Below, piece by piece: positions 11,387 to 64,000 of a stretch of DNA of 64,000 bases. The DNA is from Octopus sinensis. Lineage: Eukaryota. The DNA is taken from contig NC_043008.1 of NCBI RefSeq assembly GCF_006345805.1, positions 59,272,001 through 59,336,000 on the forward strand, in the 5' to 3' direction. A program made the translations under genes and the position numbers. The stretch's first letter is position 1. Each line of letters opens with the position of its first letter. Under the pieces are notes generated by a model. That model was not told where the DNA came from. It did no database searches and saw only the letters and a list, made by a program, of their open reading frames with translations.

Positions 11387-11414
11387 CCAAGATATATATA
11401 TGTGAAACACTTAC

Positions 11415-11819: not shown

Positions 11820-11862
11820 CTGCAATGCGACAGATAATACAGAGTAAAGATTCTAATTTCAA

Positions 11863-35950: not shown

Positions 35951-36028
35951 AGGGACAATATTGATAAAAAGCAAAAAGCAAAAATACGAAAAAAAAACAT
36001 AGAATAAGAATTTTTATAAATAACTTAC

Positions 36029-36179
36029 CTATGAAGAGGATGGCAAGAATATTCGCCGGTTGCGACAACATATTGAGCGATAATATAATTAATTGGATAA
36101 GATTGTAACGACCATTGTGCTTAAGTTCCCTAATTATCAAATCGACATTAACTTTTTTTCCGTCTATCGTCTTGGCCAT
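36029..36179 (-). CDS. SLC22: SLC22-family organic cation/anion transporter, coding exon 1 (N-terminus, TM1)
   Basis: ATG in aaaatATGG context; MAKTIDGKKVNVDLIIRELKHNGRYNLIQLIILSLNMLSQPANILAILFIG; donor G|GTAAGT at 36028; 151 nt, phase 1 joins exon 2 as G|GA (Gly). Confidence 0.85.
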
Positions 36180-40799: not shown

Positions 40800-43090
40800 G
40801 TAGTAGATCAAATTTCTGCTTTTGCGAAAATCTGTCCATTTTTTTTTTTTTGTTCTAATGGATTTATCAGTATGCGTGTATTGAAACCTTCCACGTCTGT
40901 TATTACAAGTGGATACGTGAATGTTTTATCTTGTTTGTTCACGTTAAATTTTGCCTTTGTTAATAACTTCTTTAGGTTATGTGGTTGCCTTTTGCTTAAG
41001 ATAAGTGTTTGATTAGTTATTATGTTTTTTTTCAGTTTTTCACTTTGTTTCATGATTGACAAATTTGTTTTGATGATGTTTAAAATGTTTTGGTGATGCG
41101 GATTGTGTGTTACTAGAAGTGGTATTGAGTTCCATTGATGGGTTCGTCTTTTTCGTATTGTTCTATAGGTATCTCTTTTGCTCGTTGTATGTTATTTTCT
41201 ATAAGAGGGTATTTTTGCTTGAGCAGAAATATTTGGGATTCTATAAGTCGTATGTTTCTGGTACTTAGATCATCTACTATAGTACAAATGTTCCTAACTA
41301 GACAGTATGAGATGTTGCGTTTTGTGTGTGTTGGGTGACATGATTTGAAATGTAGGTACCGGTGTGTATTTGTGCTTTTGTAATAAATATCAGCTGTGAT
41401 GGTTCTGTTGCTTTTAATTACGATTATGTCAAGAAATGGTAATTGTAGGTTGCTCATTTCTGTTGTGAATTTGAAACTAGGGTGTAGATCGTTGAGGAGG
41501 GTGCTGAATTCTTCCAGATTTCCTAGAGATTTGGTCCAAACTAGGAAACAATTATCGAAGTGTCTTTTCCATGTGTTCTCTATATGTCTTTTAAAGATCA
41601 TGCCGTAGTTTTATTCATTTTTTTAAACATAGGTTTTGTTCTAAGTATTCTGATACTGAGTTTGCGAAAACTGGAGCAAATCGCGTCCCCATAGATGTGC
41701 CTTGAATTTGGTGGTAGTTTTTTTTCCGTTGAAAAGGAATGTATTTTGTTTTTTCGAGAATGAGACTGACCACATCTAGTATGAGGGTTACAGTAAATCT
41801 GGGGTTCGCTTCTCTTTGTTCCTCGCCCCAATATTTTATGGCAGTAATTCCCAAATCATGTGGAATATTCGTATATAAGTTTGTTACATCAAACTTATAT
41901 AACAGTGAATTGGACTCTGTTGTTTTGGGCAGATGTGACAGGAAATCAATGTCATCCCGAATGAAACTGAGTATGTGACTACATAGTAGTTCTAAGATAA
42001 TGTCAGTGAGGTTGTTTAGACGATGTGTAGGACGGGCTGGACCAGCTATAATAGGACTTAGTTTAAGGTCTTTTGGTTGGAGTAGTTTTATGTATTCACT
42101 AACTTGTTTTTTTCTTTAAAGTGCTTTTGTATTTCTTTTGACTTGTGTATTTTAAGTAAGCCATAAAAGTTGCTAGATTTCGACTAAAAATTAGTAATAT
42201 AGTCCCTTTCATTAGGAGTGGGAGAATTATATTGCTTTAAGACTAAATAATTGAGTTTCTTCATGATACGGTGGTCAATAATTGAGGGTATTTCACAGTA
42301 GAATGTTGTATCCTTCAAATGATTTTCAGCTAGATTCCGTATCCATTATAACAATGGTACCCCATTTATCCGCTTGTTTAATGACAATTGTGCTGTCATT
42401 TTTAAGATGTATAAGGGTAGACTTTTCTAGTTTTGATATCTTTGGTCTGACGTTGATGTTGTGCCTCAGTGAGAATCTGGAAAGGATATCAATGAACTGA
42501 TCTAGATGTGCATTTCGTCCTTTTGGCGGGTCAAATTTTGATTTACTTTTCGCCAAGGATTCGTCATTCTCATTATTTTTATCAGTATGTGAAAATGATC
42601 TTTTGGGTTTATTTGACAGTCTAATATGGTTTTTTTTTTTGTTTTGTTTTGTTTCTAACAGGTGATTTTTGTTGAGGTCTTGAATATGATTCTTCCCGGT
42701 TTTTCTTCCTCTAATATTTTGATCAAACGAGTAATTGTTTTGTTTACTAACGTTTTGATCGTTATCAAAGGAATGTTCGTTTTGTTTATGGTATTCTTGT
42801 ATGCTACGTGTATTGGTATGTTTCTTGGTATTTTTAAATGATAAAAAATTCTTACCGTAGTTCCTTGTCGTTGACAGTTTTTCTTGCCACGTCTTTTTGT
42901 GTATATTGTGTTGGTTAGGTTGCTTCCTTATATACCTTTTACGTGGTACTGAAGTGTCATTACCGTAGTTTTCAGCATATTTATCAAGGGACAATTGTTC
43001 CTTTCGCCATAAATGTCTTGATTTACTATCTTCATTTCTAATATCTTTAATCCACATCACTTTCATTTTCTCAGCTATATTTCCCGTGGC
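40800..43090 (-). mobile_element. Penelope-like element RT region, decayed
   Basis: IVIKQADKWGTIVIMD; YHQIQGTSMGTRFAPVFAN; RHFDNCFLVW; LNDLHPSFKFTTE..LPFLDI..DIYYKSTNTHRYLHFKSCHP; stops and frameshifts; no GIY-YIG domain seen. Confidence 0.88.
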
Positions 43091-49845: not shown

Positions 49846-50540
49846 AGGCGGCGAGCTAGCAGAAACGTTAGCACGCCGGGCGAAATGCTTAGCGGTATTT
49901 CGTCTGCCTTTACGTTCTAAGTTCAAATTCCGCCGAGGTCGACTTTGCCTTTCATCCTTTCGGGGTCGATAAATTAAGTACCAGTTACACACTGGGGGTC
50001 GATGTAATCGACTTAATCCGTTTGTCTGTCCTTGTTTGTGCTCTCTGTATTTAGCCCCTTGTGGGTAGTAAATAAATAGGTATTTCGTCTGCCGCTACGC
50101 TCCGAGTTCAAATTCCGCCGAGGTCGACTTTGCCTTTCATCCTTTCGGGGTCGATAAATTAAGTACCAGTTACACACTGGGGTCGATGTAATCGACTTAA
50201 TCCGTTTGTCTGCCCTTGTTTGTGCTCTCTGTGTTTAGTCCCTTGTGGGTAGTAAAGAAATAGGTATTTCGTCTGCCGCTACGTTCCGAGTTCAAATTCC
50301 GCCGAGGTCGACTTTGCCTTTCATTCTTTCGGGGTCGATTAAATATGTACCAGTTACGATGTAATCGACTTAATCTGTTTGCCTGTCCTTAAACGATTAA
50401 ATAAGTACCAGTCGATTAAATAAGTGCCAGTTATTTAATCTGGTACTTATTAAATAACCAGATTATTATTTCATCTGGTTAAGTACCAGTTGCATACTGG
50501 GGTCGATCTAATCCCCCAAAATTTAGGGCCTTGTGCCTAG
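49846..50540 (+). mobile_element. SINE family A trimer/tetramer with a scrambled 3' end
   Basis: Restarts at GGTATTTCGTCTGCCGCTACG (about 50079 and 50263); micro-rearranged core motif at 50391-50490. Confidence 0.9.
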
Positions 50541-50903
50541 ATTAGAAAATATTGTATTTTACTCATAACATTTATACTTCAATACAGTAGGTCAATGGCC
50601 TATGCAAATTGACTACTTTCCCTAATCAAATAATTAGCATTTAATGAACTAACGTCGCTGCCTCTATAGGGTTTTTAGTGCCACGTGAAAGGAAGTGGGC
50701 CGAACCCGAACAATAACACACCCAAAACTTAGAAAAAGGAAAAAAAACAAAATATTAGACTAGAGTGTCACCCACCACGTGAGAGATAACTTTGAAATAT
50801 ACTTACGTCACCAAGCGTATTATCAAAAGATGTGACTTACACATAAATTCTAATAATGCGTTTATTAATTTTTTCTGCACATAATAACGAAGTGAATATT
50901 AGT

Positions 50904-52813
50904 GTTAGTTAGTTAGTTAGTTAGTTAATTTTTGGCTCAAAAAGCAAAAAGCAAGGCCATGTAGGGGGACATGGAGTTATGTACAGGGTGGTGTTCATGT
51001 AAAGAGTTCAGGCCACTTGTGGTCAAGGGAGACTTTGAACCAAGCGGTCTTCGGCATCTTCACCATCTCGTCCGACAGCTTATTCCACGGATCCGCAACC
51101 CGGACGGAGAAAGCTCCTCTCCTTCGATTGAGATGAAATCGTCGCAGATAGAGCTTTTCGGAGTGACCCCGCAGCCGACGCTCTGGAGCAGGAGTGAAGA
51201 ACAGCTCTTTCGAGAGGTTACACTTTCCGCTTATGATGTTGTGAGCAAGAATGAGATCACCACGGCGTCGTTGTTTTTCTAGAGAATAAAGGTCGAGCGT
51301 CTTCAGCCTTTCTTCATAAGACAAATTCTTGAGACCAAGAACCATGCGGGTAGCCAGCTTCTGGACTCTTTCGAGATGTTGTATGTCTTTGAGGAGATAA
51401 GGAGAAGAGGCTTGAATCCCGTACTCCAATATGGGTATCACCAGCGTGACAGAGCGGTAGGAATATGGCTGCTGTGAGCATTCCGAATGACCGTCGAATC
51501 AAGAACAGAACTCCGCGTGCTTTGTTGGCAGCATGGACGCACTGGGCCGAAGGCGAAAAGGAGGAATTCACCAAGATACCCAGGTCCTTTACCTGGTCGG
51601 TCCTCTCCAGCAGCAGACGACCCGGCTCGAAATCAAGTTGAGTTGCAGGAGGAGAGCCGACAGGCAGATGACAGCACTTTGACACGTTCAGACACAGGTC
51701 CCATTCGTTAGACCATCTCCAAATTTGGTGGCGGCATCGACGAAGATCCTCCATATCACCGCGAGGAGCGATCAGTTTGACATCGTCGGCAAATAGAAGG
51801 GTGTGTTGCGTGAGGTCGTCGGGAAAGTCATTTATGAAGACTAAGAACAATAAGGGACCAAGCACTGGACCTTGAGGCACGCCACTGCTCGCACTGGAGA
51901 CGTCGCACAGCGAACCATTAACTTGGACTTGGAAGGAGCGATCTGAGAGGAAGGCACCAACCCATCGTACAATATCTGGATGGAAACTATATGCTTGAAG
52001 CTTGACAAGTAATAGGCGGTGGTTTACCATGTCAAAAGCTTTGGCAAAGTCCAATAAAACGATGTCAACAGCATCACCATCATCGAGGATGCGCGTCACC
52101 AATTCTTCCATTACCAGTAAGTTGGTCAAGCATGATCTCTTCGGCACGAAGCCGTGTTGGGAATCAGAGATAGAGGCAGTGTTTTAGAGGTGGAGCATCA
52201 TACTTTTCTTAAGGATGGTTTCGAACATCTTGCTGATTATTGAAGTAAGGGAAACCGGTCGGTAGTTAAGCGGGTCTTCGCGGCTCCCTTTCTTGAAAAT
52301 TGGGTAGATTATCGCTGTTCTCCAGTCCGCAGGTATAACACCCGTCGCCAATGACATATTGAGTAGACGTGTTAAGGGCTCGCAGATGACCGGAGCCAAC
52401 GCTTTGATAACCCGTGGGTGTATGCCGTCAGGGCCGTGACCCTTGTTGACATCGAGGCATTGAATAACGCGTTCTACTTCGTCCTGCGTGATGACCAATC
52501 GAAGCATTGGAGGTACCGATCTATCAAATGGAGGGGGTTCACGACCATCATCTTGTTTGAAAATAGTTGAAAAAGCCTCGGCAGATAATTGACTCTGTTG
52601 ATAAGGGTCCTCAATCGATACGCCTGTTGAGTCTACCAACGTTGCAATTTGGTTGTTCAAGCGGGAATTCCGTTGGACATGGACAAAGAAGGTTTTTGGA
52701 TTGCGACTGGCGTTTGCCGCGATTCTGTATTCATATCTGAAGCGTTCTTCCATTTCAATTTTCACGGCTCGGTCTCGTTGAGTTTTGTACACCTCAAAAG
52801 CTGCAATCGAATC
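50904..52813 (-). mobile_element. CR1-like LINE, 5'-truncated, RT domain with two frameshifts
   Basis: GPDGIHPRV..NYRPVSLTS; SCLTNLL..LDFAKAFD..SGVPQGPVLGPLLF..LFADDVK; RRRGDLI..FSVRV..WNKL; (CTAA)n tail; possible 7-bp TSD TAGTGTT (50900-50906, 52814-52820). Confidence 0.93.
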
Positions 52814-52943
52814 TAGTGTTCAAAATTCACTGCCTTACAGTGAAGTTAAATAGGACAATATTCAAAAATTAAAGGAAATTGAAAATAAATGGTTTAATTT
52901 TTATGAACATTCACACAAACACACGTTCTCTCTCACTCTCTCT

Positions 52944-52979
<36 letters not shown>

Positions 52980-53057
52980 CACACACATACACACACTGCC
53001 ACCTTCACTCTCTCTCTTTCTCTCATATTATGGATATATATATATATACACATATAT

Positions 53058-53285
53058 AGGTGTAGGAGTGGCTTTGTGGTAAGCATATAGGCGTAGGAGT
53101 GGCCGTGTGGTATATAGCTTGCTTACCAACCACATGGTTCCGGATTCTGTCCCACTGCGTTGCACCCGAGGCAAGTGTCTTCTACTATAGCCTCGGGCCG
53201 ACCAAAGCCTTGTGAGTGGATTTGGTAGTCAGAAACATAAAGAAGCCCGTCGTATATATGTATGTATATATACATGCATACATAC

Positions 53286-53317
<32 letters not shown>

Positions 53318-53578
53318 CTGTGTGTGTGTATGTGTCTGTATGTGTGTGTGTATGTATGTATGTATGTATGAGTATGTTTGTGTGTCTGTGTTTGTCCCCC
53401 TAACATCGCTTGACAACCGATGCTGGTGTGTTTACGTCCTCGTAACTCAGCGGTTCGGCAAAAGAGACCGATAGAATAAGTACTAGGCTTAAAAAAATAA
53501 GTCCTGGGGTCGATTTGCTCGACTAAAGGCGGTGCTCCAGCATGGCCACAGTCAAATGACTGAAACAAGTAAAAGAGT
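53058..53578 (+). mobile_element. SINE family B, full length, with a duplicated head start and internal (TA/TG)n
   Basis: A box TGGCCGTGTGG, B-box-like GGATTCTGTCCC, tail ..TGACTGAAACAAGTAAAAGAGT. Confidence 0.9.
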
Positions 53579-53594
53579 ATATATATATAAATAA

Positions 53595-53648
<54 letters not shown>

Positions 53649-53759
53649 TAGAAAATAGTAAAAAGTGAAAAAACTACAGAAGGCTTGTTTTAAAAGGTTA
53701 AAAAATATATATTTGAGTCAGAAAAATGTTATAAATTTTTTTCATAGTGACGTAGTTTT

Positions 53760-54300
53760 TGAAGAAATTACGGTTTCGTGTTTAACTTTTCAAATTTCTC
53801 AAAACATTGTTATGATTTCGTTAAGAAGTGTAAACAAGAGTTCCAGGTAAGGGGGGGTAATAAGTGATTTCTTCCGGTGTAAGGGAGATAATCGCTTTAT
53901 ATTTCTTGCCTTTTTTAATGGGGCGAGTTTCTCTGTATAAGAATGTTAGAGTGGTTAAGTTTGGGCTTATATTTTTCAATGAAGAATGTTTCCTTGTTTA
54001 GTCTAATTAGTGTTGGTGTTCCAATAGCACAAATTTGTGTACCAGTTTCGCACTGAGGTCGATGTAATCGACTTAATCCCTTTGTCTGTCCTTGTTTGTC
54101 CCCTCTATGTTTAGCCCCTTGTGGGCAATAAAGAAATATATATATTTAGGACTTAAGATTTGTTGCAACTTTGAATGAGTGCCTTAGGTTAAGGTTAAAA
54201 TGATGTTTGAATATAATTTGGGGGACCGGAAATATTTAAATTTATGTTTCAATGTTATGCAGCATCACAGAAATCGTACATGTTTAAAACAATGAAAGCT
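53760..54300 (-). mobile_element. Probable Penelope-like 3' (GIY-YIG C-terminal) remnant interrupted by a SINE A tail (54030-54140)
   Basis: RLNKETFFIEKYKPKLN resembles the E..FI....P.LN end of PLE endonucleases. Confidence 0.5.
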
Positions 54301-54354
54301 AAAAAAACTATTCTAAGAAACTATTTATTTTATATTATGCTAAACTATTCTTTT

Positions 54355-54460
54355 ATTCTTCTATTTGTTTCAGTCATTTGACTGCGGTCATGCTGGGACG
54401 TAAACACACGGAGATGTAAACACACTAACAACGGTAGTCAAGTGATGGGGGGAACAAACA

Positions 54461-54503
<43 letters not shown>

Positions 54504-54758
54504 GCACATGTATGAGTCGTGTTCTGTCCTCACCTTCGAAACACGCTGGAGTTGAACTAGTGACAGCTGATGAAGGGGATTTTTTCCTTGTGTAGTTTAT
54601 CTTGTACTCTGTTTTTTCGTTGCTAAAAAAGGTTCGTTTCCATGTTTGTTTTTACGTTTTCGTTTCTCGTTGAGTTCTACGTCTATTTGTGGTGTCCTGT
54701 ACTCACGTATATATATTTATATATGCATCTATATATACATGTAGATGTAGGTACGTAC

Positions 54759-54791
<33 letters not shown>

Positions 54792-54817
54792 TGTATGCAT
54801 ATATTTTATTTATTACA

Positions 54818-54882
<65 letters not shown>

Positions 54883-55043
54883 ACGGGCTTCTTTCAGTTT
54901 CCGTCGACCAAAACCACTCACCAGGCTTTGGTCGGCCCGAGGCTATAGTAGAAGGCACTTCCCCAGTGTGCCCCGGAGTGGGACTGAACCCAGAACTATG
55001 TGGTTGGGAAGCAAGCTTCTTACCATACAGTCACGCCTGCGCC
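54355..55043. mobile_element. SINE family B (minus) split around a repeat F copy (54525-54800, plus) and microsatellites
   Basis: B tail 54355-54460, B head 54880-55043. Confidence 0.7.
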
Positions 55044-55412
55044 TATATGTTGAGTATTTCTTTTCAGAAGATTTACTATAGCTTAAATAAATTGCTTTGC
55101 AATTTTACCATATATTTCCTGTGTTCTTCAAGGCCAGGTACTGCAACCAGCATAAAATTTAAATCATTCAATACTTCCTTATAAATGTATACGTCAGATC
55201 GATGGTGTACAATAATCAAATGTCTCTTCGGACAGTTCGTAAACACCCGCCCACGTGTGTGCGTGTGTGTATGAGTGTGTGTGAGTGCCTGTGTGTGTGT
55301 ATGCGCGCGCACGTATGAGTATGCAAGCATAGTTGCATTGTTGGTCTCTGTGATTTAACTCTTGACGCATTCCTCCAGTAGACGCTATAGGTTCAACGTA
55401 ATATTCGTATTA

Positions 55413-55805
55413 AGCTGGCAGAAACGTTAGCACGCCGGGCGAAATGCTTAGCGGTAATTCGTCTGTCGTTACGTTCTGAGTTCAAATTCCGCCGAGGTCG
55501 ACTTTGTCTTTCATCCTTTCGGGGTCGATTAAATAAGTACCAGTTACGCACTGGGGGTCGATATAATCGACTTAATCCCTTTGTCTGTCCTTGTTTCTCC
55601 TCTCTGTGTTTAGCCCCTTGTGGGTAGTAAAGAAATAGGTATTTCGTCTGCCGCTACGTTCTGAGTTCAAATTACGCCAAGGTCGACTTTGCCTTTCATC
55701 CTTTCGAGGTTGATAAATTAAGTACCAGTTACGTACTGGGGTCCATCTAATCGACTGGCTTCTTTCCCAAAAATTTCGGGCCTTGTGCCTTTAGTAGAAA
55801 AGAAT
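55413..55805 (+). mobile_element. SINE family A dimer
   Basis: Long-tail unit, restart at about 55638, short tail. Confidence 0.9.
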
Positions 55806-55953
55806 ATTCGTATTAATGGCAATAGTAATATGGTGGCAACACCACCATTGCTGATGCTGATGATGATGATGATGATAATTATGATGATGATGATGATGAT
55901 GATGATGCTACTGCTGTTGCTGCTGCTACAAGCCAGAATTGCTGTTGAATTCC

Positions 55954-55966
55954 ATTGGTGACGTCA
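55954..55966 (+). promoter_or_regulatory. Candidate promoter elements: reverse CCAAT box (ATTGG) abutting a palindromic CRE (TGACGTCA)
   Basis: ATTGG 55954-55958 and TGACGTCA 55959-55966, about 54 bp upstream of the ATG. TGACGTCA also occurs elsewhere in the window (about 7539 and 33597), so motif evidence alone is weak. Confidence 0.35.
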
Positions 55967-56019
55967 CAGTTGAAAGTAAAACTATTTCTGTCCATTGAGA
56001 ATTATTTGAGGTGACCGGC

Positions 56020-58008
56020 ATGGATTCCACAGAGAATGAAAGTGTTTCGGCTTCTGAACGCCTCTGCTCTCAGCGTGAACAAATAGCCGACCAGTCACAA
56101 GATCCAGGCGAAGCAAATGAAGAAGAAGACAAAACTACAGGAGATAATGAAGACAATATTTATCATGAAGAAGGTGAATACGAAAATATTGAAGGGGATG
56201 TTACTGATGATGTGAAAACTAGAGGCGGTTATATTGACGATATGTATTCTCAAAATAGTGATCATGAATATATTGAAGGGGATGTTACTGATGATGTGAA
56301 AACTACAGAAGGTTATAATGACGATATATACTCTCAAAATAGTGATCAGGAAAATATCAAAGGAGATGTTACTGATGATGTGAAAACTACAGAAGGTTTT
56401 TATGACGGTACATATTCGCAAAGCAATGATTATGAGAATATTGAAGGGGATCGTACCGATACTGTGAAAACTGCAGGAGGTTATATTGACGATATATATT
56501 CTCAAAGCAGTGAACAGGAAAATATTGAAGGGGATGTTACTGATGATGTGAAAACTACAGAAGGTTTTTATGACGGTACATATTCGCAAAGCAATGATTA
56601 TGAGAATATTGAAGGGGATCGAACCGATACTGTGAAAACTGCAGGGGGTTATATTGACGATATATATTCTCAAAGCAGTGCACATGAAAATATTGAAGGG
56701 GATGTTACTGATGATGTGAAAACTACAGGCGGTTATAGTGACGATATATACTCTCAAAATAGTGATCATGAAAATATTGAAGAGGATGTTACTGATGATG
56801 TGAAAACTACCGGCAATTATATTGACGATATATCTTCTCAAAGCAGTGATTATGAGAATATTGAAGAGGATGGTACCGATACTGTGAAAGCTACAGGAGA
56901 TAATGATGATATTATATGTTCTCAAAGCATTGATCATGAGAATATTGAAGAGGAGTGTACTGATACGGTGAAAACTACAGGAGATAATGATGATGATATA
57001 CATTCTCGAAGCATTGATCATGGAAACACTGAAGGCTGTGCTACTGTTGACGTGAACGGAAGTCCAAACAATGACCAGTTAAACAAAGGTTCCTCGGATG
57101 TAGACAAAGAGAAATATGGTACGCATGAAGAAGCAGACAATAAGGATGTTTATGAAAATAACAAAATTCAACATGAGAAATTGAATGAAGCAGACGATGT
57201 CACGAATAAGAAAAGATTAATCAAAGGTGGCGAAAGAACTACTTTATCGGTCAATGATGACTTAGATAGGTTTCAAAGTCATGGCGCATATCTAATTTAT
57301 GATATGTTTTATAATCCACAATACAGAATGAACCCAAAACCTGTGTACGATATTGACATAGTTCCGACATCTGAAGGAGCAACTTTGGTAAGTCAAGATC
57401 CTACAATACGCGATCCATCGTGGCATAGTACACCGTATCATCCTTCCCGAGAGTCCTATTTCACTAGAATGTCAGAACAGGAACCCTTGACAGGCGAGAA
57501 ATCATTTCTTCATTCGATTACCGATCGATATACACCTCCTGATTCACTTTTCTATGTAAGCAGCCCTTCAACGTCAGGTCAATATTCTCCTGTGTCAGTA
57601 AGATATATAGATGAATCTCAATATATTACACGCGATGATGATACACCTGAGTCTTACTGCTCGATCTCGACTACAGATGAGGATATACCTGAGTCATACT
57701 ACTCGATTTCGACCACCGATGAGGATATACCTGAGACATACTATTCGTTCCCTACTACTGATGACGATACACCTGAGGCATTCTACTCGATCTCGACTGC
57801 CAATAATGATACACCTGAGGCATTCTACTCGATCTCGACTGCCAATAATGATACACCTGAGGCATTCTACTCGATCTCGACTGCCGATGCGGATACACCT
57901 GAGGCATACTACCCGTTCTCGACTGATAAACCATTTCGCCGAGTTACTTTTAGGTCTCCAGTCGACATAATACCAGTGGATACTCAAAATTCTCCTTTCG
58001 AAATATGA
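56020..58008 (+). CDS. Uncharacterised 662-aa acidic D/E/T/S/Y-rich tandem-repeat protein, apparently single coding exon
   Basis: 1989-nt stop-free ORF in AT-rich DNA; ATG at 56020 with G at -3 and +4; in-frame TGA at 55996 upstream; AATAAA at 58058; no SINEs or microsatellites across about 55930-58440; repeat variants keep the frame. Confidence 0.75.
   Translation: MDSTENESVSASERLCSQREQIADQSQDPGEANEEEDKTTGDNEDNIYHEEGEYENIEGDVTDDVKTRGGYIDDMYSQNSDHEYIEGDVTDDVKTTEGYNDDIYSQNSDQENIKGDVTDDVKTTEGFYDGTYSQSNDYENIEGDRTDTVKTAGGYIDDIYSQSSEQENIEGDVTDDVKTTEGFYDGTYSQSNDYENIEGDRTDTVKTAGGYIDDIYSQSSAHENIEGDVTDDVKTTGGYSDDIYSQNSDHENIEEDVTDDVKTTGNYIDDISSQSSDYENIEEDGTDTVKATGDNDDIICSQSIDHENIEEECTDTVKTTGDNDDDIHSRSIDHGNTEGCATVDVNGSPNNDQLNKGSSDVDKEKYGTHEEADNKDVYENNKIQHEKLNEADDVTNKKRLIKGGERTTLSVNDDLDRFQSHGAYLIYDMFYNPQYRMNPKPVYDIDIVPTSEGATLVSQDPTIRDPSWHSTPYHPSRESYFTRMSEQEPLTGEKSFLHSITDRYTPPDSLFYVSSPSTSGQYSPVSVRYIDESQYITRDDDTPESYCSISTTDEDIPESYYSISTTDEDIPETYYSFPTTDDDTPEAFYSISTANNDTPEAFYSISTANNDTPEAFYSISTADADTPEAYYPFSTDKPFRRVTFRSPVDIIPVDTQNSPFEI
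56182..57021 (+). repeat. Coding minisatellite, 10 x 84 nt (28 aa: ENIEGDVTDDVKTTGGYIDDIYSQSSDH)
   Basis: Read from the translation; units 3-4 and 5-6 are a near-identical 168-nt higher-order duplication. Confidence 0.95.
57634..57927 (+). repeat. Coding minisatellite, 7 x 42 nt (14 aa: DDDTPEAFYSISTA)
   Basis: Read directly from sequence and translation. Confidence 0.95.
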
Positions 58009-58057
58009 GATTCTTCGAGATGAATTCGTAGGGTTATGTTTTTAAGTTTTTCAGGCC

Positions 58058-58063
58058 AATAAA
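58058..58063 (+). terminator. Candidate polyadenylation signal AATAAA
   Basis: 50 bp after the ORF stop; AATAAA is common in AT-rich DNA. Confidence 0.4.
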
Positions 58064-59003
58064 TAAATATTTTGCTGTGAAATAGCAAAAAGATTCTGGA
58101 ATATTGTACAGTTGAAATATTAATTAGTTGCCCAAATATTAATTAGTTCACCAATTAAAATTTTATACGAAAATTAACAATAATGAAACTGATAATTTTA
58201 TTTCCAGTGCTCCAGGCATTCAACATGAAAGAACTAATATGTTCTACATCGACCTATAACTTACTTCCCTCTCCTAAAACTTGTATTTAACTTAGTACTA
58301 AACTCCAAAGTATGTACTAAACTGTAGACTTAACGGTACTTTGACTACATATTAAACTTTATACTAAAACGTAACTTAAACACAATACTACAGCGAAGAT
58401 ACACGGCAAATTAAGATAGTCAACTTTACTTTTGATGAAGGATTGCTTGGAGGAAGGAAATATAGCCGCAGTCTTCGGTGAGATCAACATGTTTAACGTA
58501 TCTCTTGAACAAGTACAAGTCTACCATTGTAGGAAAAGTATGCGCATTGAAAGGATTTTGGAGGCCTGACGTTGTGGGAGAACCAAGCATGGATGGTGGC
58601 TAGGGGAGAGTACATGGTAGTGGATACAATATAGCCGACTAGAGAAAGAGAGACGCTTGCGTTTGGAAGATCTGACAACTTAGCTCCGAGGAACCCTATT
58701 GTCAGCAGTAATCTAAACTGTAGGCAAAATTCTGTACTACCCGGCGCGTGAATGCATTCAGAACGCCTGCTGCGTCCCTTCTCCAGACGGAAGATTCTTA
58801 GTCTGTTCAACGCCGTTGTCTGTTCATCAATGCATCAAGCTGTTTCTGAGAAAAATGACATAAAAAATTGTCCGGTTTAGCTCGATCTCCCGCTCTCCTC
58901 TCTTCTGCTCTCTCTTACTCTCTCCCGCTCTTCTCTCTTCTTTTTCTCTTTCACTTTATCTCTCTCTCTCTCCTTCTCAATACATATATACATACATATA
59001 TAC

Positions 59004-59035
<32 letters not shown>

Positions 59036-59139
59036 TGATAAAAATGGTAAGACAACAAAAGAAAGTAAGAGACCTCGATATTATGTAAAAAGAGGAATTT
59101 ATCTGTAAATGTAATATGTGACAATTATTCGGTAGCCAT

Positions 59140-59200
59140 GATAAAACTCCGAGTTTCGGACGCCAAGGTGGAAATCCACGCCACCATCTCTTCAGTTATC
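59140..59200 (-). ncRNA. Type-I hammerhead-like motif
   Basis: GATAA-CTGAAGA-GATGGTGG..CCACC..CGTCC-GAAA-CTC G GAG-T-T-TTATC: intact core, stem I 5 bp, palindromic stem III; stem II is one base out of register. Confidence 0.5.
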
Positions 59201-59312
59201 CGGCCATTGGAAAAATGCTATGAAAAATGACCTTTATACAAAGGTAAATTACTTTGTGATTGACCATTATTAAGACAAAAGAGCTATTCGAAGGAACTCT
59301 AAGTAAGGGGGT

Positions 59313-59533
59313 AAAAAAGTCCATAGTATTCGCGTAAGCGCGCCTGTTCATACCTACACATGTGCGCGCCTAAAAGTATACATTGTATGTATATATATAT
59401 ACATTTGACGAAGGATGAGAGTGAGGATGTGCACGTTTTCAAGTGAGGGTGAATGAATGTATACTTTTAGGCGCACGCACATGGTTATGCGAGCGCACAT
59501 GTGTAGGTTACACGAATACTATGAACTTTTTTT
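59313..59533. mobile_element. MITE-like inverted repeat
   Basis: AAAAAAGTCCATAGTATTCGCGTAA / TTACACGAATACTATGAACTTTTTT plus inner arms CCTACACATGTGCGC..AAAAGTATACATT. Confidence 0.7.
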
Positions 59534-59823
59534 CCAAATTATTATATCAGCATAATAATATAAGGATGAGATGCGTGCTATTTGGTCTCTAATTTATATG
59601 TTAATGCTTTGGCGTTTCCGCTGATGAGAACTTCGCCTTGCAAATTATTTTATTTGCTAATTAAAGTTCGAAATCTGAGGTCCGGCTATAAAACATGCTA
59701 AATGTTTTTTTTTATTTTTCATTCCCTTCGAAATTGCTCTTAAACTGTGGTTTGGACTCTTTGACTATTATTTCTAGTATGTTAGGCAACTTGTTTAAGG
59801 CTCACCTTTTTGTGTTTAAACAC

Positions 59824-59929
<106 letters not shown>

Positions 59930-59936
59930 TATTCAA

Positions 59937-60128
59937 AGGGCACAATGCATGTCTTTAAGTGATACTAAGAGTTTCATATGTTGAGAAATGTTTCAAACAT
60001 AATTCATTAGGCACTAACCACATAATTTTAGCTCGTTATGATATGTGGTTTGTGCCTGAAGATTATGTTTGAGACATTTCTCACCGTATGAAACTATTAG
60101 TAGCATTGAAAGACATGGATTTTGTCCT
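59937..60128. mobile_element. Hairpin MITE sharing termini with the 17306 mini-element
   Basis: AGGGCACAATGCATGTCTTT.. / ..AAAGACATGGATTTTGTCCT; arms of about 85 bp; degenerate TTAA flanks. Confidence 0.7.
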
Positions 60129-60139
60129 CTAAATAAATA

Positions 60140-60640
60140 CTATTCATCTCTTACCAGACAGAACAGTACATTATATGTGGTGCGCTGGAAGATGGTAAGA
60201 AACCAGCACATAAACCCAAAATGAGATTCAATTGCTGCCTCAGAATTACTCTGACACAGATAGGAATTTCAGTTGTTGATTGGGAGAAGGAGGCATAAGA
60301 CCGAGATGGATGGAGGAGGAGAGTGCACGGTGGTTGTTCGAGATTTGAGGGAGAGAGAATGAAGCATGAGAAGAATAGAAGGCTTAGAAGAAATAAACCC
60401 GTGGAGAATGAGGGAGTGTTGCTTTTAATGTGTGTGGTTTGTGGGAGGATGTGTTTGAGCCATGCGGAGCTGGTCAGCCATCAGAGAACGCAGAGGATTC
60501 AACCCATGGTAAATTGTGATAAGGCTATTGTTCACAACAGAGCGTGTGTAACATGTGGAAAGGTACACCTCTCAGCTGGACGATTGAAAAGGTATGTCAA
60601 AATAGTTCATACTGCGGCACCCAGCCCAGCTGTGCATTAT
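60140..60640 (+). mobile_element. RTE (BovB-like) LINE 3' fragment with C-terminal zinc-finger-like motifs
   Basis: KPKMRF..L...GI...WE..A*DR.GWR..V..G..RFE..R..R.RR then CVVCGRMCLSHAELVSHQR. Confidence 0.75.
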
Positions 60641-61313
60641 GCTATAGAATGTGTAAAACTTTTGCCGGGCTCAAGAGACATACAAGGGCCTCACGTTGCA
60701 TCCTCAGTGATTCGTTTCAATGATTCTTTCAACTAATGGTTCTGCTCGTATACAAGAAACCAGCTAAGATTATGTATATGTATATATATATTCAAATGAA
60801 TATGGTACTTAATTTAGATGCACCAGAATTTTGTATGCTGTTACCCATAAAAATTTGTGGGGTGATTATAATCAAAAATAAGCAACAAGAATGATTCCGG
60901 TAATTTGGTACAATTGTTTCATACTACAACATTTTATTAAAAGCTGTAAATATTACAGCAGATTTAAGATGCTGAGTACTCTTCAGCCAATTTATATAGG
61001 TTTTCCAATAATATAAAAACTTTCAAAACAAGTAGTAACATTTTAGGGAAGGTAAATATACAGATAAAGATGTAGATATACATTTTAGGAACATATGAGG
61101 TTGTGTAGTTCAGTTGCTAACTGACCAAAACTCTGCTTGCATCTGACTGCTATAAGAATTTTTTAGTTTTAAGAATGAGGGTAAGGGGAGGTTTCAGAAT
61201 ACCATAAAAGGAATTCAAGTTGGTTGTAGAACAGAGGGTAAGGAGGATTTCAGAATACCATAAAGGAATTCAAGTTGTCACTAAACAAAAAGCCAATTTT
61301 TCTATGTGGTGAG

Positions 61314-61524
61314 AAGAAATCTTTAAAAATACTTCTTACAGCTGTTTCAGCCTATGGATAAAAGTAGATAATTTTATTGTCATTGCTTATAGGTGTCGAC
61401 ATACTACCCTATTTTTAAATGCCTACAACCTCAGTATCTTGACATCTATAGGCAATGAAAATAAAATTATCTACTTTTATTCATAGACTGAAACAGCTGT
61501 AAGAAGTGTTTTTAAAGATTTCTT
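61314..61524. mobile_element. MITE with 84-bp TIRs
   Basis: Arms 61314-61397 and 61441-61524 (AAGAAATCTTTAAAAATACTTCTTACAGCTGTTTCAG..). Confidence 0.82.
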
Positions 61525-62008
61525 TAATTTATATTATGACTTTTATAATTTGTATTCTTGTCTTATATCTTTGATGTTCTCATTTTGTTAAATGAATAAA
61601 TAATCCAACATTATAATATCCGAAAGTTGATGAACAAACTAAATTTGTTTCTCCATTTTCATATTTGTATTATAAGTTTAAGGTAAAAATATTTCTTTAC
61701 CTTCACCTGTTTAATACAATAAATGAGTTAATTGCATTGCAATTAAAAACATTTATGTATTAAGAACCTGGGTTCTGTACCAACAGTATATTGGATAAAT
61801 GCTATCCCATAGTGGGTTACACCCCTAACTTCTATCTTACTTTGTACTATATGTATGTATGTGTATATATATATATATAAACATGCACAAAACTCACTCA
61901 CAATTTATAGATTCCGCAAAATGAGGCAGAACGAATCATTAAAATCTTTCCGTGCACGCGCGGGTGTTGTGTGTGTGTGTGTAGATATATACATAAATAT
62001 ATAAATGA

Positions 62009-62094
<86 letters not shown>

Positions 62095-62111
62095 CATAAA
62101 TATATAAATGA

Positions 62112-62192
<81 letters not shown>

Positions 62193-62266
62193 CATTAGGA
62201 GAGAGAGGCAATAGATAGACATATAGTCAGAGAGATTGATGAGACAGAGAGAAAGGGGAGAGTGAG

Positions 62267-62317
<51 letters not shown>

Positions 62318-62336
62318 TAGATAGATAGATAGATAT

Positions 62337-62413
<77 letters not shown>

Positions 62414-62627
62414 GTGACAGCTATTGTATTCTCTATATACTGAGATTTTGCCAAATCTTATACAAGTGATTGCGAGAAGTTTTATGAAACACTATGGCGA
62501 TGACAAGAAGTGACAGCTATTAAGAGACACTATTTGAACAGCCAATGTAATTGCGGATTAAAGCAATTGTAACTACTGTCTATTGCGTTGGCTACTATTG
62601 CTTCTGGTATTCTGAAAAGGTTTCATC

Positions 62628-62710
<83 letters not shown>

Positions 62711-62715
62711 TTTTG

Positions 62716-62745
<30 letters not shown>

Positions 62746-62747
<2 letters not shown>

Positions 62748-63008
62748 AGGCGCAATGGCCTAGTGGTTTCGATTCCCAGACCGGGCGTTGTAAGTGTTTA
62801 TTGAGCGAAAACACCTTAAAGCTCCACGAGGCTCCGGCAGGGGGTGGTGATCCCTGCTGTACTCTTTCACCACTCTTTCTCTCACTCTTTCTTCTGTTGG
62901 CCTGCTCGCTTAGCCAGCGGGGTGGCGTCATTCGAAGGCTAAAACAATGCGAACGCATCGTGACCAGCGATGTGTAACAACATCTGATGGCCTGGTCGGT
63001 CACGTGGT

Positions 63009-63015
<7 letters not shown>
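62746..63015 (+). mobile_element. SINE family C (head with an internal deletion)
   Basis: GGAGGCGCAATGGCCTAGTGG-TTTCGATTCCC; third tail type. Confidence 0.8.
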
Positions 63016-63055
<40 letters not shown>

Positions 63056-63642
63056 TATATTATATTATATTATATGACATTATATATTATTAAGGTGAGA
63101 AGGATGGAGATTTAAACGGTGTAAGTTTGAAGAACCAGAATATGAAAGAGAAAACAGGAAAAAAGCAAGAGGTATGGGAGAACTTGTGTTTTGGATCCTT
63201 TGACCGTAATGTCATAAGGCTGAGAGGATAGTGGCCTAGAGTCTGTGGCTCAGCTGCTCAATCCGGAGAGGATAGTTGTTCCCATTTCACCAACAGGGAC
63301 TTATCCTTATATTTACAACTGATGAAAATTTCAGACCTGGAATTCAGCAGTGTGATAGAGTTCTTAGATCTGAAAAGTACCTGTGTTCTTTCATTACCAT
63401 TATCATAATATAATGTAATCGCTGCAAGAGAAAGAAATAAAGACAACAAAATGTTGGGTCGAGCTCAAATAACATATAGACGAGAGCCGAGCGAAATGTC
63501 AATATGAAGAGGTTCTTGAGTAAATGACATTAAAAAAAGATTTTGTTAATCATTACAATAATTAATTATTATGCTATAAAACTTATAGGAAAATAAAGGT
63601 TATAATATAATGAATATTTTAACATAGAGTATATGCAATTTT

Positions 63643-63941
63643 GTGGACGCGCAATAGCCCAGTGGTTAGGGCAGCGGACTCGCGGTCGGAGGATCGTGGT
63701 TTCGATTCCCAGACCGGGCGTTGTGTGTGTTTATTGAGCGAAAACACCTAAAGCTCCACGAGGCTCCGAAAGGGGGTGGTGGTGACCCCTGTTGTACTCT
63801 TTCGCCCCAACTTTCTCTCACTGTTTCTTGAGTAACGCTGCGATGGACTGGCGTACCGTCCAGCTGGGGGGAACACATACGCCCTAGAAACCGGGCTCAT
63901 GAGCCTAGCTAGGCTTGAAAAGGGCGCATAAATAAAACAAA
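63643..63941 (+). mobile_element. SINE with family C head and family D (V-like) tail, 12-bp TSD
   Basis: ATATGCAATTTT at 63631-63642 and 63942-63953. Confidence 0.88.
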
Positions 63942-64000
63942 ATATGCAATTTTAACCAATTGAAGCTCATTTGAGCTCAACCCAACATTTTTTTGGGTCA

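What the first reader, a model, noticed from the sequence alone, without database searches (positions are those of the whole stretch)
56020..58008. Orphan intronless acidic repeat protein with a PP1-docking RVxF-x5-II signature
Seen: a 662-aa ORF with no family I recognise, low-complexity and probably disordered, no obvious signal peptide or TM segment, ending ..KPFRRVTFRSPVDII (RRVTF 57937-57951, II 57967-57972). Known: RVxF followed 5-8 residues later by two hydrophobic residues is the bipartite PP1 docking motif; as I recall, NIPP1 has the same spacing (RVTFSEDDEII). Inference: a lineage-specific PP1-interacting scaffold with a long acidic Tyr/Thr/Ser repeat arm. The surrounding 2.5 kb lacks SINEs and microsatellites, unlike the rest of the window, which suggests constraint.
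Basis: partly seen in the sequence, partly recalled or inferred. Interest (0 to 1): 0.72.

Follow-up and report, generated by a model that had tools for sequence, protein, structure and literature searches.

The report
Fast-evolving orphan acidic repeat gene
This is most likely a real but young, fast-evolving gene for a very acidic repeat protein, and its apparent phosphatase (PP1) docking motif lies in a tail that the only known relative does not translate, so the motif is probably a recent or chance feature.

Summary
The ORF is very likely a real gene. An orthologous locus from another species (Logan contigs L001 and L002) keeps the ATG, the reading frame over about 460 codons, a CCAAT/CRE block upstream and the AATAAA downstream. 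All coding indels there are multiples of three. A neutral simulation expects 8-15 stop codons and none is seen.

No other homologue turned up in Pfam, the PDB or an exhaustive HMMER scan of 1.84 billion proteins, so "orphan" holds.

The protein consists of two in-frame coding minisatellites (28 aa x10 and 14 aa x7) around a unique core. Only the core and the linker before it show purifying selection (dN/dS 0.4-0.5, against about 1 in the repeats).

In the orthologue the ORF stops inside its single 14-aa unit. The RVTF-homologous DNA lies after two stops and a frameshift, and the 20 nt that encode SPVDII are missing. The orthologue's protein has no RVxF-like match at all. A bipartite match arises by chance in about 2% of shuffles, before allowing for post-hoc motif choice.

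The absence of SINEs is not informative. A conserved FYNPQY motif in the core is a better docking candidate. Overall this is an ordinary lineage-restricted repeat gene of modest interest.

The parts
55930..56019 (+). Conserved 5' flank, a putative core promoter plus 5'UTR. It contains a reverse CCAAT box (ATTGG, 55954-55958) directly abutting a full palindromic CRE (TGACGTCA, 55959-55966). An in-frame stop TGA is at 55996-55998.
   Evidence: 88% identical to L001 with no indels, including a 30/30 identical block TTCCATTGGTGACGTCACAGTTGAAAGTAA. The CRE occurs 4 times in the window against 0.82 expected. Promoter function is inferred, not shown.
56020..58008 (+). Complete coding sequence, 662 aa plus stop TGA (58006-58008)
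   Evidence: ORF list and sequence. The orthologous ORF keeps the ATG and the frame over about 460 codons, with indels of 21, 3, 252 and 3 nt. A neutral simulation expects 8-15 stops, with P(no stop) = 0/2000. For the non-repeat parts alone P = 0.001-0.006.
56182..57021 (+). Array of ten 28-aa (84-nt) acidic units, consensus ENIEGDVTDDVKTTGGYNDDIYSQSSDH (aa 55-334). A decayed eleventh unit reaches about 57056.
   Evidence: TRF finds period 84, 10.4 copies. There are 7 units in the orthologue. T8, D9 and S23 are invariant in all 17 units. Units 3/5 and 4/6 are 95-96% identical, which indicates a recent 168-nt duplication. dN/dS between species is 0.97. AF2 gives pLDDT 60-84 with beta strands, but the segment falls on the disordered side of the charge-hydropathy plot.
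57214..57639 (+). Unique core (aa 399-540). Its first half (aa 399-470) and the linker before it are the only parts with detectable purifying selection.
   Evidence: dN/dS is 0.37 for the linker (aa 346-398), 0.48 for aa 399-470 and 0.81 for aa 471-540. Long identical blocks include LIKGGER..LSVNDDLDRFQ.HGAYLIYD.FYNPQYRM..KPVYD. AF2 gives low confidence, with one or two short helices just before NPQY.
57307..57324 (+). FYNPQY (aa 430-435), an FxNPxY-type motif conserved in both species
   Evidence: Regex hit in the window protein. NPQY is present in P0001 at aa 353. It lies inside the best-conserved block. Its function is inferred only.
57631..57924 (+). Array of seven 14-aa (42-nt) units, D[TI]PE[AST][FY]Y[SP][IF][SP]T plus three variable residues (aa 538-635)
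   Evidence: TRF finds period 42, 7 copies. Units 5 and 6 are 100% identical. The orthologue has one degenerate unit that contains its stop codon.
57925..58005 (+). C-terminal tail DKPFRRVTFRSPVDIIPVDTQNSPFEI. It carries RRVTF (57937-57951) and II (57967-57972), the candidate PP1-docking signature.
   Evidence: It matches the loose and strict RVxF patterns and RVxF-x5-PhiPhi, with the same spacing as NIPP1 RVTFSEDDEII. It is not translated in the orthologue. The aligned tail is 42% divergent, with indels of 1, 20 and 10 nt. AF2 pLDDT is about 23.
58058..58067 (+). Two overlapping AATAAA polyadenylation signals, 50 nt after the stop
   Evidence: Read from the sequence. They align with the only + strand AATAAA in the 2.5-kb orthologous contig. 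Use as the poly(A) signal is inferred.
55400..55756 (.). Tandem pair of SINE-like elements immediately upstream. They are context, not part of the gene.
   Evidence: blastn of this element finds 20 merged copies in the window, and this is the last one.

Best explanation
The ORF is a genuine, single-copy and probably single-exon protein-coding gene. As far as public data reach, it is confined to a narrow lineage; the window looks like an octopod genome.

It encodes a 74-kDa polyanionic protein (pI about 4) with no signal peptide or membrane segment. The protein has three parts:
- ten 28-residue acidic units, each with a conserved ..TD..VK.. and ..IYSQ.. signature;
- a roughly 140-residue unique core with a conserved FYNPQY motif. 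Its first half, together with the linker before it, is the only region under measurable purifying selection;
- seven 14-residue units followed by a 27-residue tail.

Both arrays are coding minisatellites. They grow and shrink in frame by slippage or unequal exchange (10 versus 7 units, and 7 versus 1).

Inferred mode of action. Selection keeps the frame and the composition (about 24% D+E and abundant S/T/Y in both species) but not the exact sequence. The arms therefore most likely act through bulk, multivalent properties. They would form a phosphorylatable acidic-aromatic platform that binds basic partners or cations, anchored or addressed by short motifs in the conserved core.

The RRVTF-x5-II string sits in the least conserved part of the gene, which is untranslated in the orthologue. 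It is therefore a chance or very recent, species-specific feature and not what the gene family is for.

Shown: the gene's anatomy, the orthology, frame maintenance, the regional dN/dS values, repeat turnover and non-conservation of the motif. Inferred: expression, single-exon structure, cellular location and the scaffold function.
For: The ORF and both arrays are in the sequence.

The one orthologue, P0001, is encoded on genomic-looking Logan contigs from two runs, and the identical 467-aa product was seen on 5 contigs. The locus alignment includes both flanks.

CDS indels are 21, 3, 252 and 3 nt. Flank indels are 1, 1, 2, 6, 12, 2 and 4 nt. Neutral simulation expects 8-15 stops over the CDS (0/2000 runs stop-free) and gives P = 0.001-0.006 for the 249 non-repeat codons. 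The other five frames of the core are closed.

dN/dS is 0.97-1.02 in the N-terminus and repeats, and 0.37-0.48 in the linker and first half of the core.

Composition is conserved: D+E is 24% in both proteins.

There is no homologue in Pfam or the PDB. An exhaustive HMMER search of 1.84e9 representatives found only P0001 plus a spurious bacterial repeat protein. Viral and metagenome scans found nothing.

The gene is single copy in the window, with no TM segment or signal peptide.

The conserved upstream CCAAT/CRE block and the conserved AATAAA bracket the ORF.

The motif is not conserved.
Against: - No transcript or peptide evidence could be obtained.
- The exact 662-aa product is not on record in the assembly collection.
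- dN/dS is about 1 over two thirds of the protein, and the CDS diverges faster (21.7%) than its flanks (12-17%). This is also what a decaying or barely functional ORF with self-propagating stop-free repeats might look like.
- Only one orthologue exists, so selection estimates rest on a single pair and the ancestral state of the tail is unknown.
- The scaffold and polyanion function is an inference from composition. AF2 suggests the 28-aa array could be folded.
- An upstream coding exon spliced in just before the ATG cannot be excluded.
Confidence: 0.62

Rival explanations
1. The protein is a PP1-interacting scaffold: the C-terminal RRVTF-x5-II docks the PP1 catalytic subunit as NIPP1 does, and the acidic S/T/Y repeat arm is a substrate or targeting arm.
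For: RRVTF fits both the loose and the strict RVxF consensus, and II follows after 5 residues. The bipartite pattern appears in only 2.2% of shuffles and the strict RVxF in 1.0%. The spacing is identical to the NIPP1 peptide RVTFSEDDEII, whose II is essential for binding. The tail has AF2 pLDDT of about 23, consistent with an accessible linear motif. From my own knowledge, RRxT is a basophilic-kinase site of the kind that switches RVxF motifs off in KNL1 and Repo-Man.
Against: In the only orthologue the tail is not translated: there is a TAG in the single 14-aa unit, then a second stop and a 1-nt indel, and the 20 nt encoding SPVDII are missing. The 467-aa product has no RVxF-like string anywhere. 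The tail is the most divergent aligned segment (42%), with indels that are not multiples of three. The basic stretch N-terminal to RVTF, essential in the NIPP1 peptide, is reduced to one K and one R. The motif was picked after the fact from hundreds of possible linear motifs. No SILK, MyPhoNE or other PP1 motif accompanies it.
Confidence: 0.12
2. It is not a functional gene. The long ORF is a by-product of two stop-free minisatellites around a decaying or never-functional sequence, that is, a pseudogene or proto-gene.
For: dN/dS is about 1 in the N-terminus and the 28-aa array, and 0.8 overall. The CDS diverges faster than its flanks. Amplifying a stop-free unit makes a long ORF automatically; the antisense strand of the array also gives a 308-aa ORF. 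There is no expression evidence, and the product is not on record.
Against: The 249 non-repeat codons stay open in both species, against P = 0.001-0.006 under neutrality. All four CDS indels are multiples of three, whereas flank indels are not. The core and linker have dN/dS of 0.37-0.48. All 17 diverged units (73-96% identical within the window) remain stop-free in the sense frame, while the antisense ORF is not preserved in the orthologue, where it is 163 aa. The ATG, the promoter-like block and the AATAAA are conserved.
Confidence: 0.1
3. The ORF is the large last exon, or the only coding exon, of a multi-exon gene. In that case 'intronless' is wrong and the N-terminus may be longer, for example adding a signal peptide or a known domain.
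For: AG dinucleotides lie between the upstream TGA and the ATG (..ttgag|aattatttgag|gtgaccggcATG). A strong acceptor-like tract (ttttcag|gcc) is conserved just before the AATAAA. The flanks are more conserved than synonymous sites, so the transcribed region may be larger than the ORF.
Against: The polypyrimidine tracts before the candidate 5' acceptors are poor, especially in L001. The ATG and its context are identical in both species, and an in-frame TGA lies 24 nt upstream in both. A conserved CCAAT/CRE pair sits 55-65 nt upstream of the ATG, where a core promoter would be. No other part of the window resembles this protein.
Confidence: 0.12
4. The 28-aa array is a real, cation-dependent beta-solenoid domain, for example a Ca2+-binding repeat fold, and not a disordered arm.
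For: AF2 on the two-sequence alignment gives three strands per unit, pLDDT 60-84 over aa 48-330 and pTM 0.44. The best Foldseek neighbours are all beta-solenoids. Positions I3, T8, D9, V11, K12, Y22 and S23 are near-invariant across 17 units, although overall dN/dS is about 1.
Against: [quoted passage not shown] All Foldseek hits are insignificant (E >= 0.34, TM <= 0.19). Each 28-residue unit has a net charge of about -7 and only 4-6 hydrophobic residues, which places it well on the disordered side of the charge-hydropathy boundary (H 0.36 against a boundary of 0.50).
Confidence: 0.1
5. It is a transposon- or virus-derived ORF.
For: It is an intronless ORF in a repeat-rich region with a SINE pair 264 nt upstream. 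LINE and mariner fragments occur elsewhere in the window.
Against: There is no TE or viral domain in Pfam and no relative in viral contigs. It is single copy in the window. It sits at an orthologous position, with alignable flanks on both sides, in a second species.
Confidence: 0.02

Closest known systems
NIPP1 (PPP1R8) PP1-docking segment, RVTFSEDDEII
   Same: It has the identical RVTF core and the same 5-residue spacing to II. Both sit in a segment predicted to be flexible.
   Different: There is no sequence homology and no FHA domain. The N-terminal basic stretch that is essential in NIPP1 is nearly absent. The motif is not conserved, or even translated, in the orthologue. Binding is untested.
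RVxF motifs with an embedded basophilic-kinase site (KNL1 RRVSF, Repo-Man RVTF). This comparison rests on my own knowledge and was not tested here.
   Same: The R-R-V-T-F arrangement would allow a phospho-switch on the Thr.
   Different: Those motifs are conserved across long evolutionary distances and lie in proteins with known mitotic roles. Here the motif is confined to one species in the available data.
Taxonomically restricted (orphan) genes encoding repeat-rich disordered proteins; hundreds of cephalopod-specific genes are reported in cephalopod genome papers (general knowledge)
   Same: There is no detectable homologue outside a narrow lineage. The gene evolves fast (dN/dS about 0.8), is short and probably single-exon, has biased composition and keeps its frame without keeping its sequence.
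   Different: Nothing sets it apart from this class. Its particular repeat units (28 aa and 14 aa) and its core define a new family with two known members.
Proteins encoded by coding minisatellites (VNTR-type repeat proteins such as mucins, involucrin and DSPP)
   Same: The arrays are in frame, and unit number differs between species (10 vs 7, 7 vs 1). Near-identical neighbouring units indicate recent duplication.
   Different: It has no signal peptide and is not obviously secreted. The units are acidic and Tyr-rich, not Ser/Thr/Pro-rich.
FxNPxY signals that bind PTB-domain adaptors (LDL-receptor type)
   Same: An exact FxNPxY match (FYNPQY) is conserved in both species within the most constrained block.
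   Different: The classical signals sit in cytoplasmic tails of membrane receptors, and this protein has no membrane segment. The match was also found post hoc, and binding is untested.
Acidic-aromatic stretches of histone chaperones and other polyanionic IDPs (own knowledge; a lead only)
   Same: There are runs of D/E punctuated by Tyr/Phe (DDIY, EAFY), and the net charge is strongly negative.
   Different: No homology, no nuclear localisation signal conserved between the two species, and no experimental link.

Membership tests
PP1-interacting proteins with RVxF-PhiPhi docking (NIPP1 type) | RVxF consensus [KR][KR]?[VI]{P}[FW] | tested here: met
   RRVTF at aa 640-644 matches the ELM-like, strict and Meiselbach patterns.
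PP1-interacting proteins with RVxF-PhiPhi docking (NIPP1 type) | Two hydrophobic residues 5-8 residues C-terminal of RVxF | tested here: met
   II at aa 650-651, 5 residues after F644. NIPP1 has the same spacing.
PP1-interacting proteins with RVxF-PhiPhi docking (NIPP1 type) | Basic stretch N-terminal of RVxF, essential in the NIPP1 peptide | tested here: not met
   The upstream sequence is STDKPFR, with only K637 and R640, against KRKRK in NIPP1.
PP1-interacting proteins with RVxF-PhiPhi docking (NIPP1 type) | Motif lies in an accessible, disordered segment | tested here: met
   AF2 pLDDT is about 23 over aa 600-662. This comes from a shallow two-sequence alignment, so the support is weak.
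PP1-interacting proteins with RVxF-PhiPhi docking (NIPP1 type) | Motif conserved in orthologues | tested here: not met
   In the orthologue the ORF stops before the homologous DNA. SRVTFRSM* is readable only in the +1 frame after a stop. The 20 nt encoding SPVDII are absent. There is no RVxF-like string in P0001.
PP1-interacting proteins with RVxF-PhiPhi docking (NIPP1 type) | Physical, RVxF-dependent binding to the PP1 catalytic subunit | not testable with these tools
   Needs a pull-down, ITC or FP assay, or at least a complex prediction with PP1c. The structure tool accepted only sequences from this window.
NIPP1/PPP1R8 homologues | Sequence homology, including the FHA domain | tested here: not met
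   No Pfam domain above threshold and no PDB relative.
Taxonomically restricted (orphan) protein-coding genes | No detectable homologue outside a narrow lineage | tested here: met
   Only P0001 was found. Pfam, PDB, viral and metagenome searches were negative. The cephalopod coverage of these databases is unknown.
Taxonomically restricted (orphan) protein-coding genes | Evidence that the ORF is maintained by selection | tested here: met
   Coding indels are all multiples of three, there are no stops against 8-15 expected, and core dN/dS is 0.37-0.48.
Taxonomically restricted (orphan) protein-coding genes | Transcription and translation | not testable with these tools
   No RNA-seq or proteomics access. 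The exact product is not on record.
Beta-solenoid repeat proteins | Significant structural similarity to solved solenoids and a plausible hydrophobic core | tested here: not met
   Foldseek best E is 0.34 and TM <= 0.19. Net charge is about -7 per unit, and the array falls on the disordered side of the charge-hydropathy plot. The known AF2 artefact applies.
FxNPxY / PTB-binding signal carriers | Conserved FxNPxY motif | tested here: met
   FYNPQY at aa 430-435, with NPQY also in P0001.
FxNPxY / PTB-binding signal carriers | Location in the cytoplasmic tail of a membrane receptor | tested here: not met
   No hydrophobic segment; maximum KD19 is 0.33.
Transposable-element or viral ORFs | TE or viral domains, multiple copies, or a lineage-variable insertion site | tested here: not met
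   No such Pfam domain. Single copy in the window. Orthologous position with alignable flanks. No viral relatives.

The most novel reading that the evidence does not exclude
This would be a young, octopod-restricted gene caught in the act of acquiring a functional docking motif. In-frame expansion of a 14-aa coding minisatellite, together with a shifted stop codon, would have brought former 3'-UTR-like sequence into the reading frame. That would create a NIPP1-like RRVTF-x5-II PP1-binding site in one species and rewire a polyacidic, multiply phosphorylatable scaffold to PP1.
Probability: 0.1. Interest if true: 0.55.

Novelty: new member of a known kind. Interest (0 to 1): 0.27.

Why it matters
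If the gene is expressed, it adds one more lineage-restricted, rapidly evolving repeat protein to the cephalopod list. It is also a clean small example of how coding minisatellites and stop-codon shifts remodel a protein's ends between close species.

It matters more as a caution. A textbook-quality linear motif (strict RVxF, correct PhiPhi spacing, identical to NIPP1) can sit in a segment that the sister species does not translate at all. Motif matches in orphan disordered proteins therefore need orthologue checks before any functional claim.

No long-standing question becomes testable because of it.

Tried and rejected
1. Word-indexed protein searches with the core alone and the C-terminal 163 aa alone found nothing. 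They did not even recover P0001, so that index is insensitive for short queries. I relied on the full-length search and the exhaustive profile search.

2. The second hit of the exhaustive search, P0002 (E 1.8e-7), is a bacterial secreted repeat protein. It matches one 39-aa stretch five times at 34-40% identity. I rejected it as a repeat-summed chance match.

3. The Pfam sub-threshold hits Dna2 (21.2 bits against a cut-off of 22.4, inside the acidic repeats) and Polo_box_4 (14.9 against 27) were rejected as compositional.

4. The PDB sequence search gave only a coiled-coil chance hit at E 0.66.

5. Scans of JGI metagenome contigs and viral contigs for relatives of the core found none.

6. Rfam and tRNA scans of 50000-64000 found nothing.

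7. A literature search for the SRA run ids found no papers, so the species of the orthologue is unknown.

8. A general search for cephalopod orphan-gene literature found nothing specific to this protein.

9. The AF2 beta-solenoid for the 28-aa array is treated as unresolved and probably an artefact.

10. I tried to decide whether the RVTF tail is ancestral (lost in the L001 species) or derived (gained in the window species). This is not decidable with two taxa. The TAC/TAG difference and the downstream indels fit either direction.

11. The antisense 308-aa ORF was rejected as a by-product of the repeat, because it is not preserved in the orthologue.
Full report
**1. Observation**

The + strand holds an uninterrupted ORF from ATG 56020 to TGA 58006-58008, 662 aa. 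The mechanical ORF starts at GTG 56011, and an in-frame TGA lies at 55996-55998. Eleven more residues (PVDTQNSPFEI) follow before the stop.

The product is 24% D+E and 6.5% K+R, with pI about 4.05 and a mass of 74 kDa. It has no hydrophobic segment and no signal-peptide-like N-terminus.

- 84 nt (28 aa) x10.4 at 56182-57056;
- 42 nt (14 aa) x7 at 57633-57925.

The side observation that the surrounding 2.5 kb lacks SINEs and microsatellites is only partly true and is not informative. A tandem SINE pair ends 264 nt upstream of the ATG, and (TGA)n lies at 55852-55907. The SINE family is absent from the whole of 55757-64000, and SINE-free gaps of 6-10 kb occur elsewhere in the window.

**2. Is it a gene?**

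A full-length protein search found a single relative, P0001: 467 aa, 53% identity, E 1.5e-162. It is encoded on about 2.5-kb Logan contigs from two sequencing runs, and the identical product was seen on 5 contigs.

These contigs are the orthologous locus, not just a similar gene. The flanks align on both sides. The 90 nt upstream of the ATG are 88% identical without indels. About 550 nt downstream of the AATAAA are 83% identical.

The upstream block contains a 30/30 identical stretch, TTCCATTGGTGACGTCACAGTTGAAAGTAA. This is a reverse CCAAT box abutting a full CRE. The AATAAA 50 nt after the window's stop aligns with the only + strand AATAAA in the orthologous contig.

Within the CDS the indels are 21, 3, 252 and 3 nt, all multiples of three. 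In the flanks they are 1, 1, 2, 6, 12, 2 and 4 nt.

At the observed divergence, random substitution would introduce 8-15 stop codons over the CDS; 0 of 2000 simulations were stop-free. The repeats could keep an ORF open cheaply, so I repeated the simulation on the 249 non-repeat codons alone. That gave P(no stop) = 0.001-0.006. The other five frames of the core are closed.

The antisense 308-aa ORF across the repeat is not preserved in the orthologue, where it is 163 aa.

I conclude that the reading frame is maintained by selection and that the ORF is very probably a real gene. It is probably a single-exon gene with its own promoter and poly(A) signal. Expression could not be tested, and the exact product is not on record in the assembly collection.

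**3. How it evolves**

Nei-Gojobori estimates against the orthologue:

| Region | dN/dS |
|---|---|
| N-terminus | 1.02 |
| 28-aa array | 0.97 |
| Linker, aa 346-398 | 0.37 |
| Core, aa 399-470 | 0.48 |
| Core, aa 471-540 | 0.81 |
| Overall | 0.80 |

The CDS differs at 21.7% of sites. That is more than either flank, at 12.2% and 16.8%.

Unit numbers differ between the two species: 10 versus 7 units of 28 aa, and 7 versus 1 units of 14 aa. Some window units are near-identical. The 28-aa units 3/5 and 4/6 are 95-96% identical, and the 14-aa units 5 and 6 are 100% identical. This indicates recent in-frame duplication.

Even so, some positions are invariant in all 17 units of both species (T8, D9, S23), and I3, V11, K12, Y22 and Q24 are nearly so. 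Acidic content is the same in both proteins, at 24%.

The pattern is a frame- and composition-constrained, sequence-labile protein with one moderately constrained unique core.

**4. Homology**

- Pfam gives nothing above threshold.
- The PDB gives nothing.
- An exhaustive HMMER profile search of the core against 1.84 billion representatives returns only P0001 and a bacterial repeat protein. The latter's score comes from five copies of a weak 39-aa match, so I regard it as spurious.
- Viral and metagenome scans are negative.
- The locus is single copy in the window and has no transposon domain.

"Orphan" is therefore supported, with the caveat that the cephalopod coverage of these databases is unknown.

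**5. The PP1 motif**

The NIPP1-derived peptide is RVTFSEDDEII, and both its II and its N-terminal basic stretch are essential for PP1 binding (PMC3531619).

The window's RRVTF-RSPVD-II matches the loose and strict RVxF patterns and the x5 spacing. In composition-preserving shuffles the match frequencies are:
- loose RVxF pattern: 20-23%;
- strict pattern: 1.0%;
- bipartite pattern: 2.2%.

That is suggestive but not compelling, because the motif was chosen after the fact from hundreds of known linear motifs. The basic stretch is nearly absent (only K637 and R640).

The decisive test is conservation, and it fails. In the orthologue the ORF ends ...DESQYFAADEDASWSY*, with a TAG where the window has TAC inside the single 14-aa unit. 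A second in-frame TAG follows nine codons later. A 1-nt indel puts the homologous AGCCGAGTTACCTTTAGG out of frame, so SRVTFRSM* is readable only in the +1 frame and only after a stop. The 20 nt that encode SPVDII in the window are missing. Both independently assembled contigs agree.

The orthologous protein contains no RVxF-like string anywhere. The aligned tail is the most divergent segment, at 42%, with indels of 1, 20 and 10 nt.

With only two taxa I cannot say whether the window lineage gained the tail or the other lineage lost it. Binding in the window's species remains possible. I give a functional PP1 interaction about 0.1.

**6. Structure**

AF2 on the core gives no fold: pLDDT 43 and pTM 0.11, with two short helices just before NPQY.

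AF2 on the full protein gives pLDDT 20-30 for aa 1-47 and 331-662. For the 28-aa array it gives pLDDT 60-84 with three strands per unit. All Foldseek neighbours are beta-solenoids, but none is significant (E >= 0.34, TM <= 0.19).

[quoted passage not shown] Each unit carries a net charge of about -7, and the array lies far on the disordered side of the charge-hydropathy boundary. I treat the solenoid as probably an artefact, and I list a cation-dependent fold as a rival at about 0.1.

**7. Most likely function**

This section is inference. The protein is probably a soluble intracellular polyanion. Its repeat arms would act through multivalent bulk properties: acidic-aromatic units with about 30 CK2-type S/T sites, and Tyr residues in acidic, Src-substrate-like contexts.

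Specific contacts are more likely in the conserved core, which carries an exact FxNPxY match (FYNPQY) present in both species. That motif is also a post-hoc find, and it lacks the membrane context of the classical signals, so it is only a lead. It does pass the conservation test that the RVxF fails.

**8. Verdict**

The coordinates and the motif are right. The flank argument and the "ends with ..DII" detail are wrong. The gene is very probably real, orphan and fast-evolving.

The PP1-scaffold interpretation is not supported as the function of the gene. It survives only as a low-probability, species-specific possibility.

This is a new two-member protein family of a familiar kind, namely lineage-restricted repeat-rich disordered proteins, and it is of modest interest.

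Noticed in passing
window 1-55756 (20 intervals, e.g. 49854-50390 and 55400-55756): One SINE-like family covers about 6% of the window in 20 merged copies. None lies between 55757 and 64000. ARAGORN and Rfam do not recognise the copies in 50000-64000 as tRNA or any known RNA family.
   Followed up: partly
window 55852-55907; L001 1-50: A trinucleotide microsatellite sits at the same place upstream of the conserved promoter-like block in both species: (TGA)n in the window and (GAC/GAT)n in the orthologous contig.
   Followed up: no
window 58066-58610; L001 1680-2170: The roughly 550 nt after the poly(A) signal are 83% identical between the species. That is more conserved than synonymous sites of the CDS (pS 0.26) and than the CDS itself (78%). 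The cause could be a longer 3'UTR, another conserved non-coding element, or inflated divergence in the repeats.
   Followed up: partly
window 58030-58057; L001 1640-1670: A strong splice-acceptor-like tract (a polypyrimidine run followed by CAG|GCC) is conserved immediately before the AATAAA in both species. Its meaning is unknown.
   Followed up: no
window 10740-11147 (+): Fragment of a mariner/Tc1-type transposase (Pfam PF01359, E 9e-25).
   Followed up: yes
window 50995-52792 (-): Three consecutive, partly overlapping ORFs of a non-LTR retrotransposon. The middle one carries a reverse-transcriptase domain (PF00078, E 3.7e-21), and the frame is broken between them.
   Followed up: partly
window 11414-11860 (-), possibly also 35980-36179 (-): The minus-strand ORF contains ..SLRWLFVNNRLDRAKDIIRHATKMNNI.., which weakly resembles the TM6-TM7 loop of organic cation transporters OCT2 and OCT3 (SLC22) at residues 275-316 (E 0.19-0.45, not significant). 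It may be an exon of an SLC22-like gene on the opposite strand. The second ORF gave no hit.
   Followed up: partly
window 56095-57021 (-): A 308-aa antisense ORF runs across the 28-aa repeat array. It is a by-product of a unit that lacks stops in that frame. The orthologue has only 163 aa there.
   Followed up: yes
window 4780, 7539, 33597, 55959: The full palindromic CRE TGACGTCA occurs 4 times in the window against 0.82 expected from shuffles. Only the copy at 55959 was examined.
   Followed up: no
window 41113-43066 (-) and 60323-60736 (+): There are further long ORFs without significant Pfam hits. The first pair looks like retroelement remnants by eye. The last has a weak C2H2 zinc-finger hint (E 0.0045, below threshold).
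   Followed up: partly
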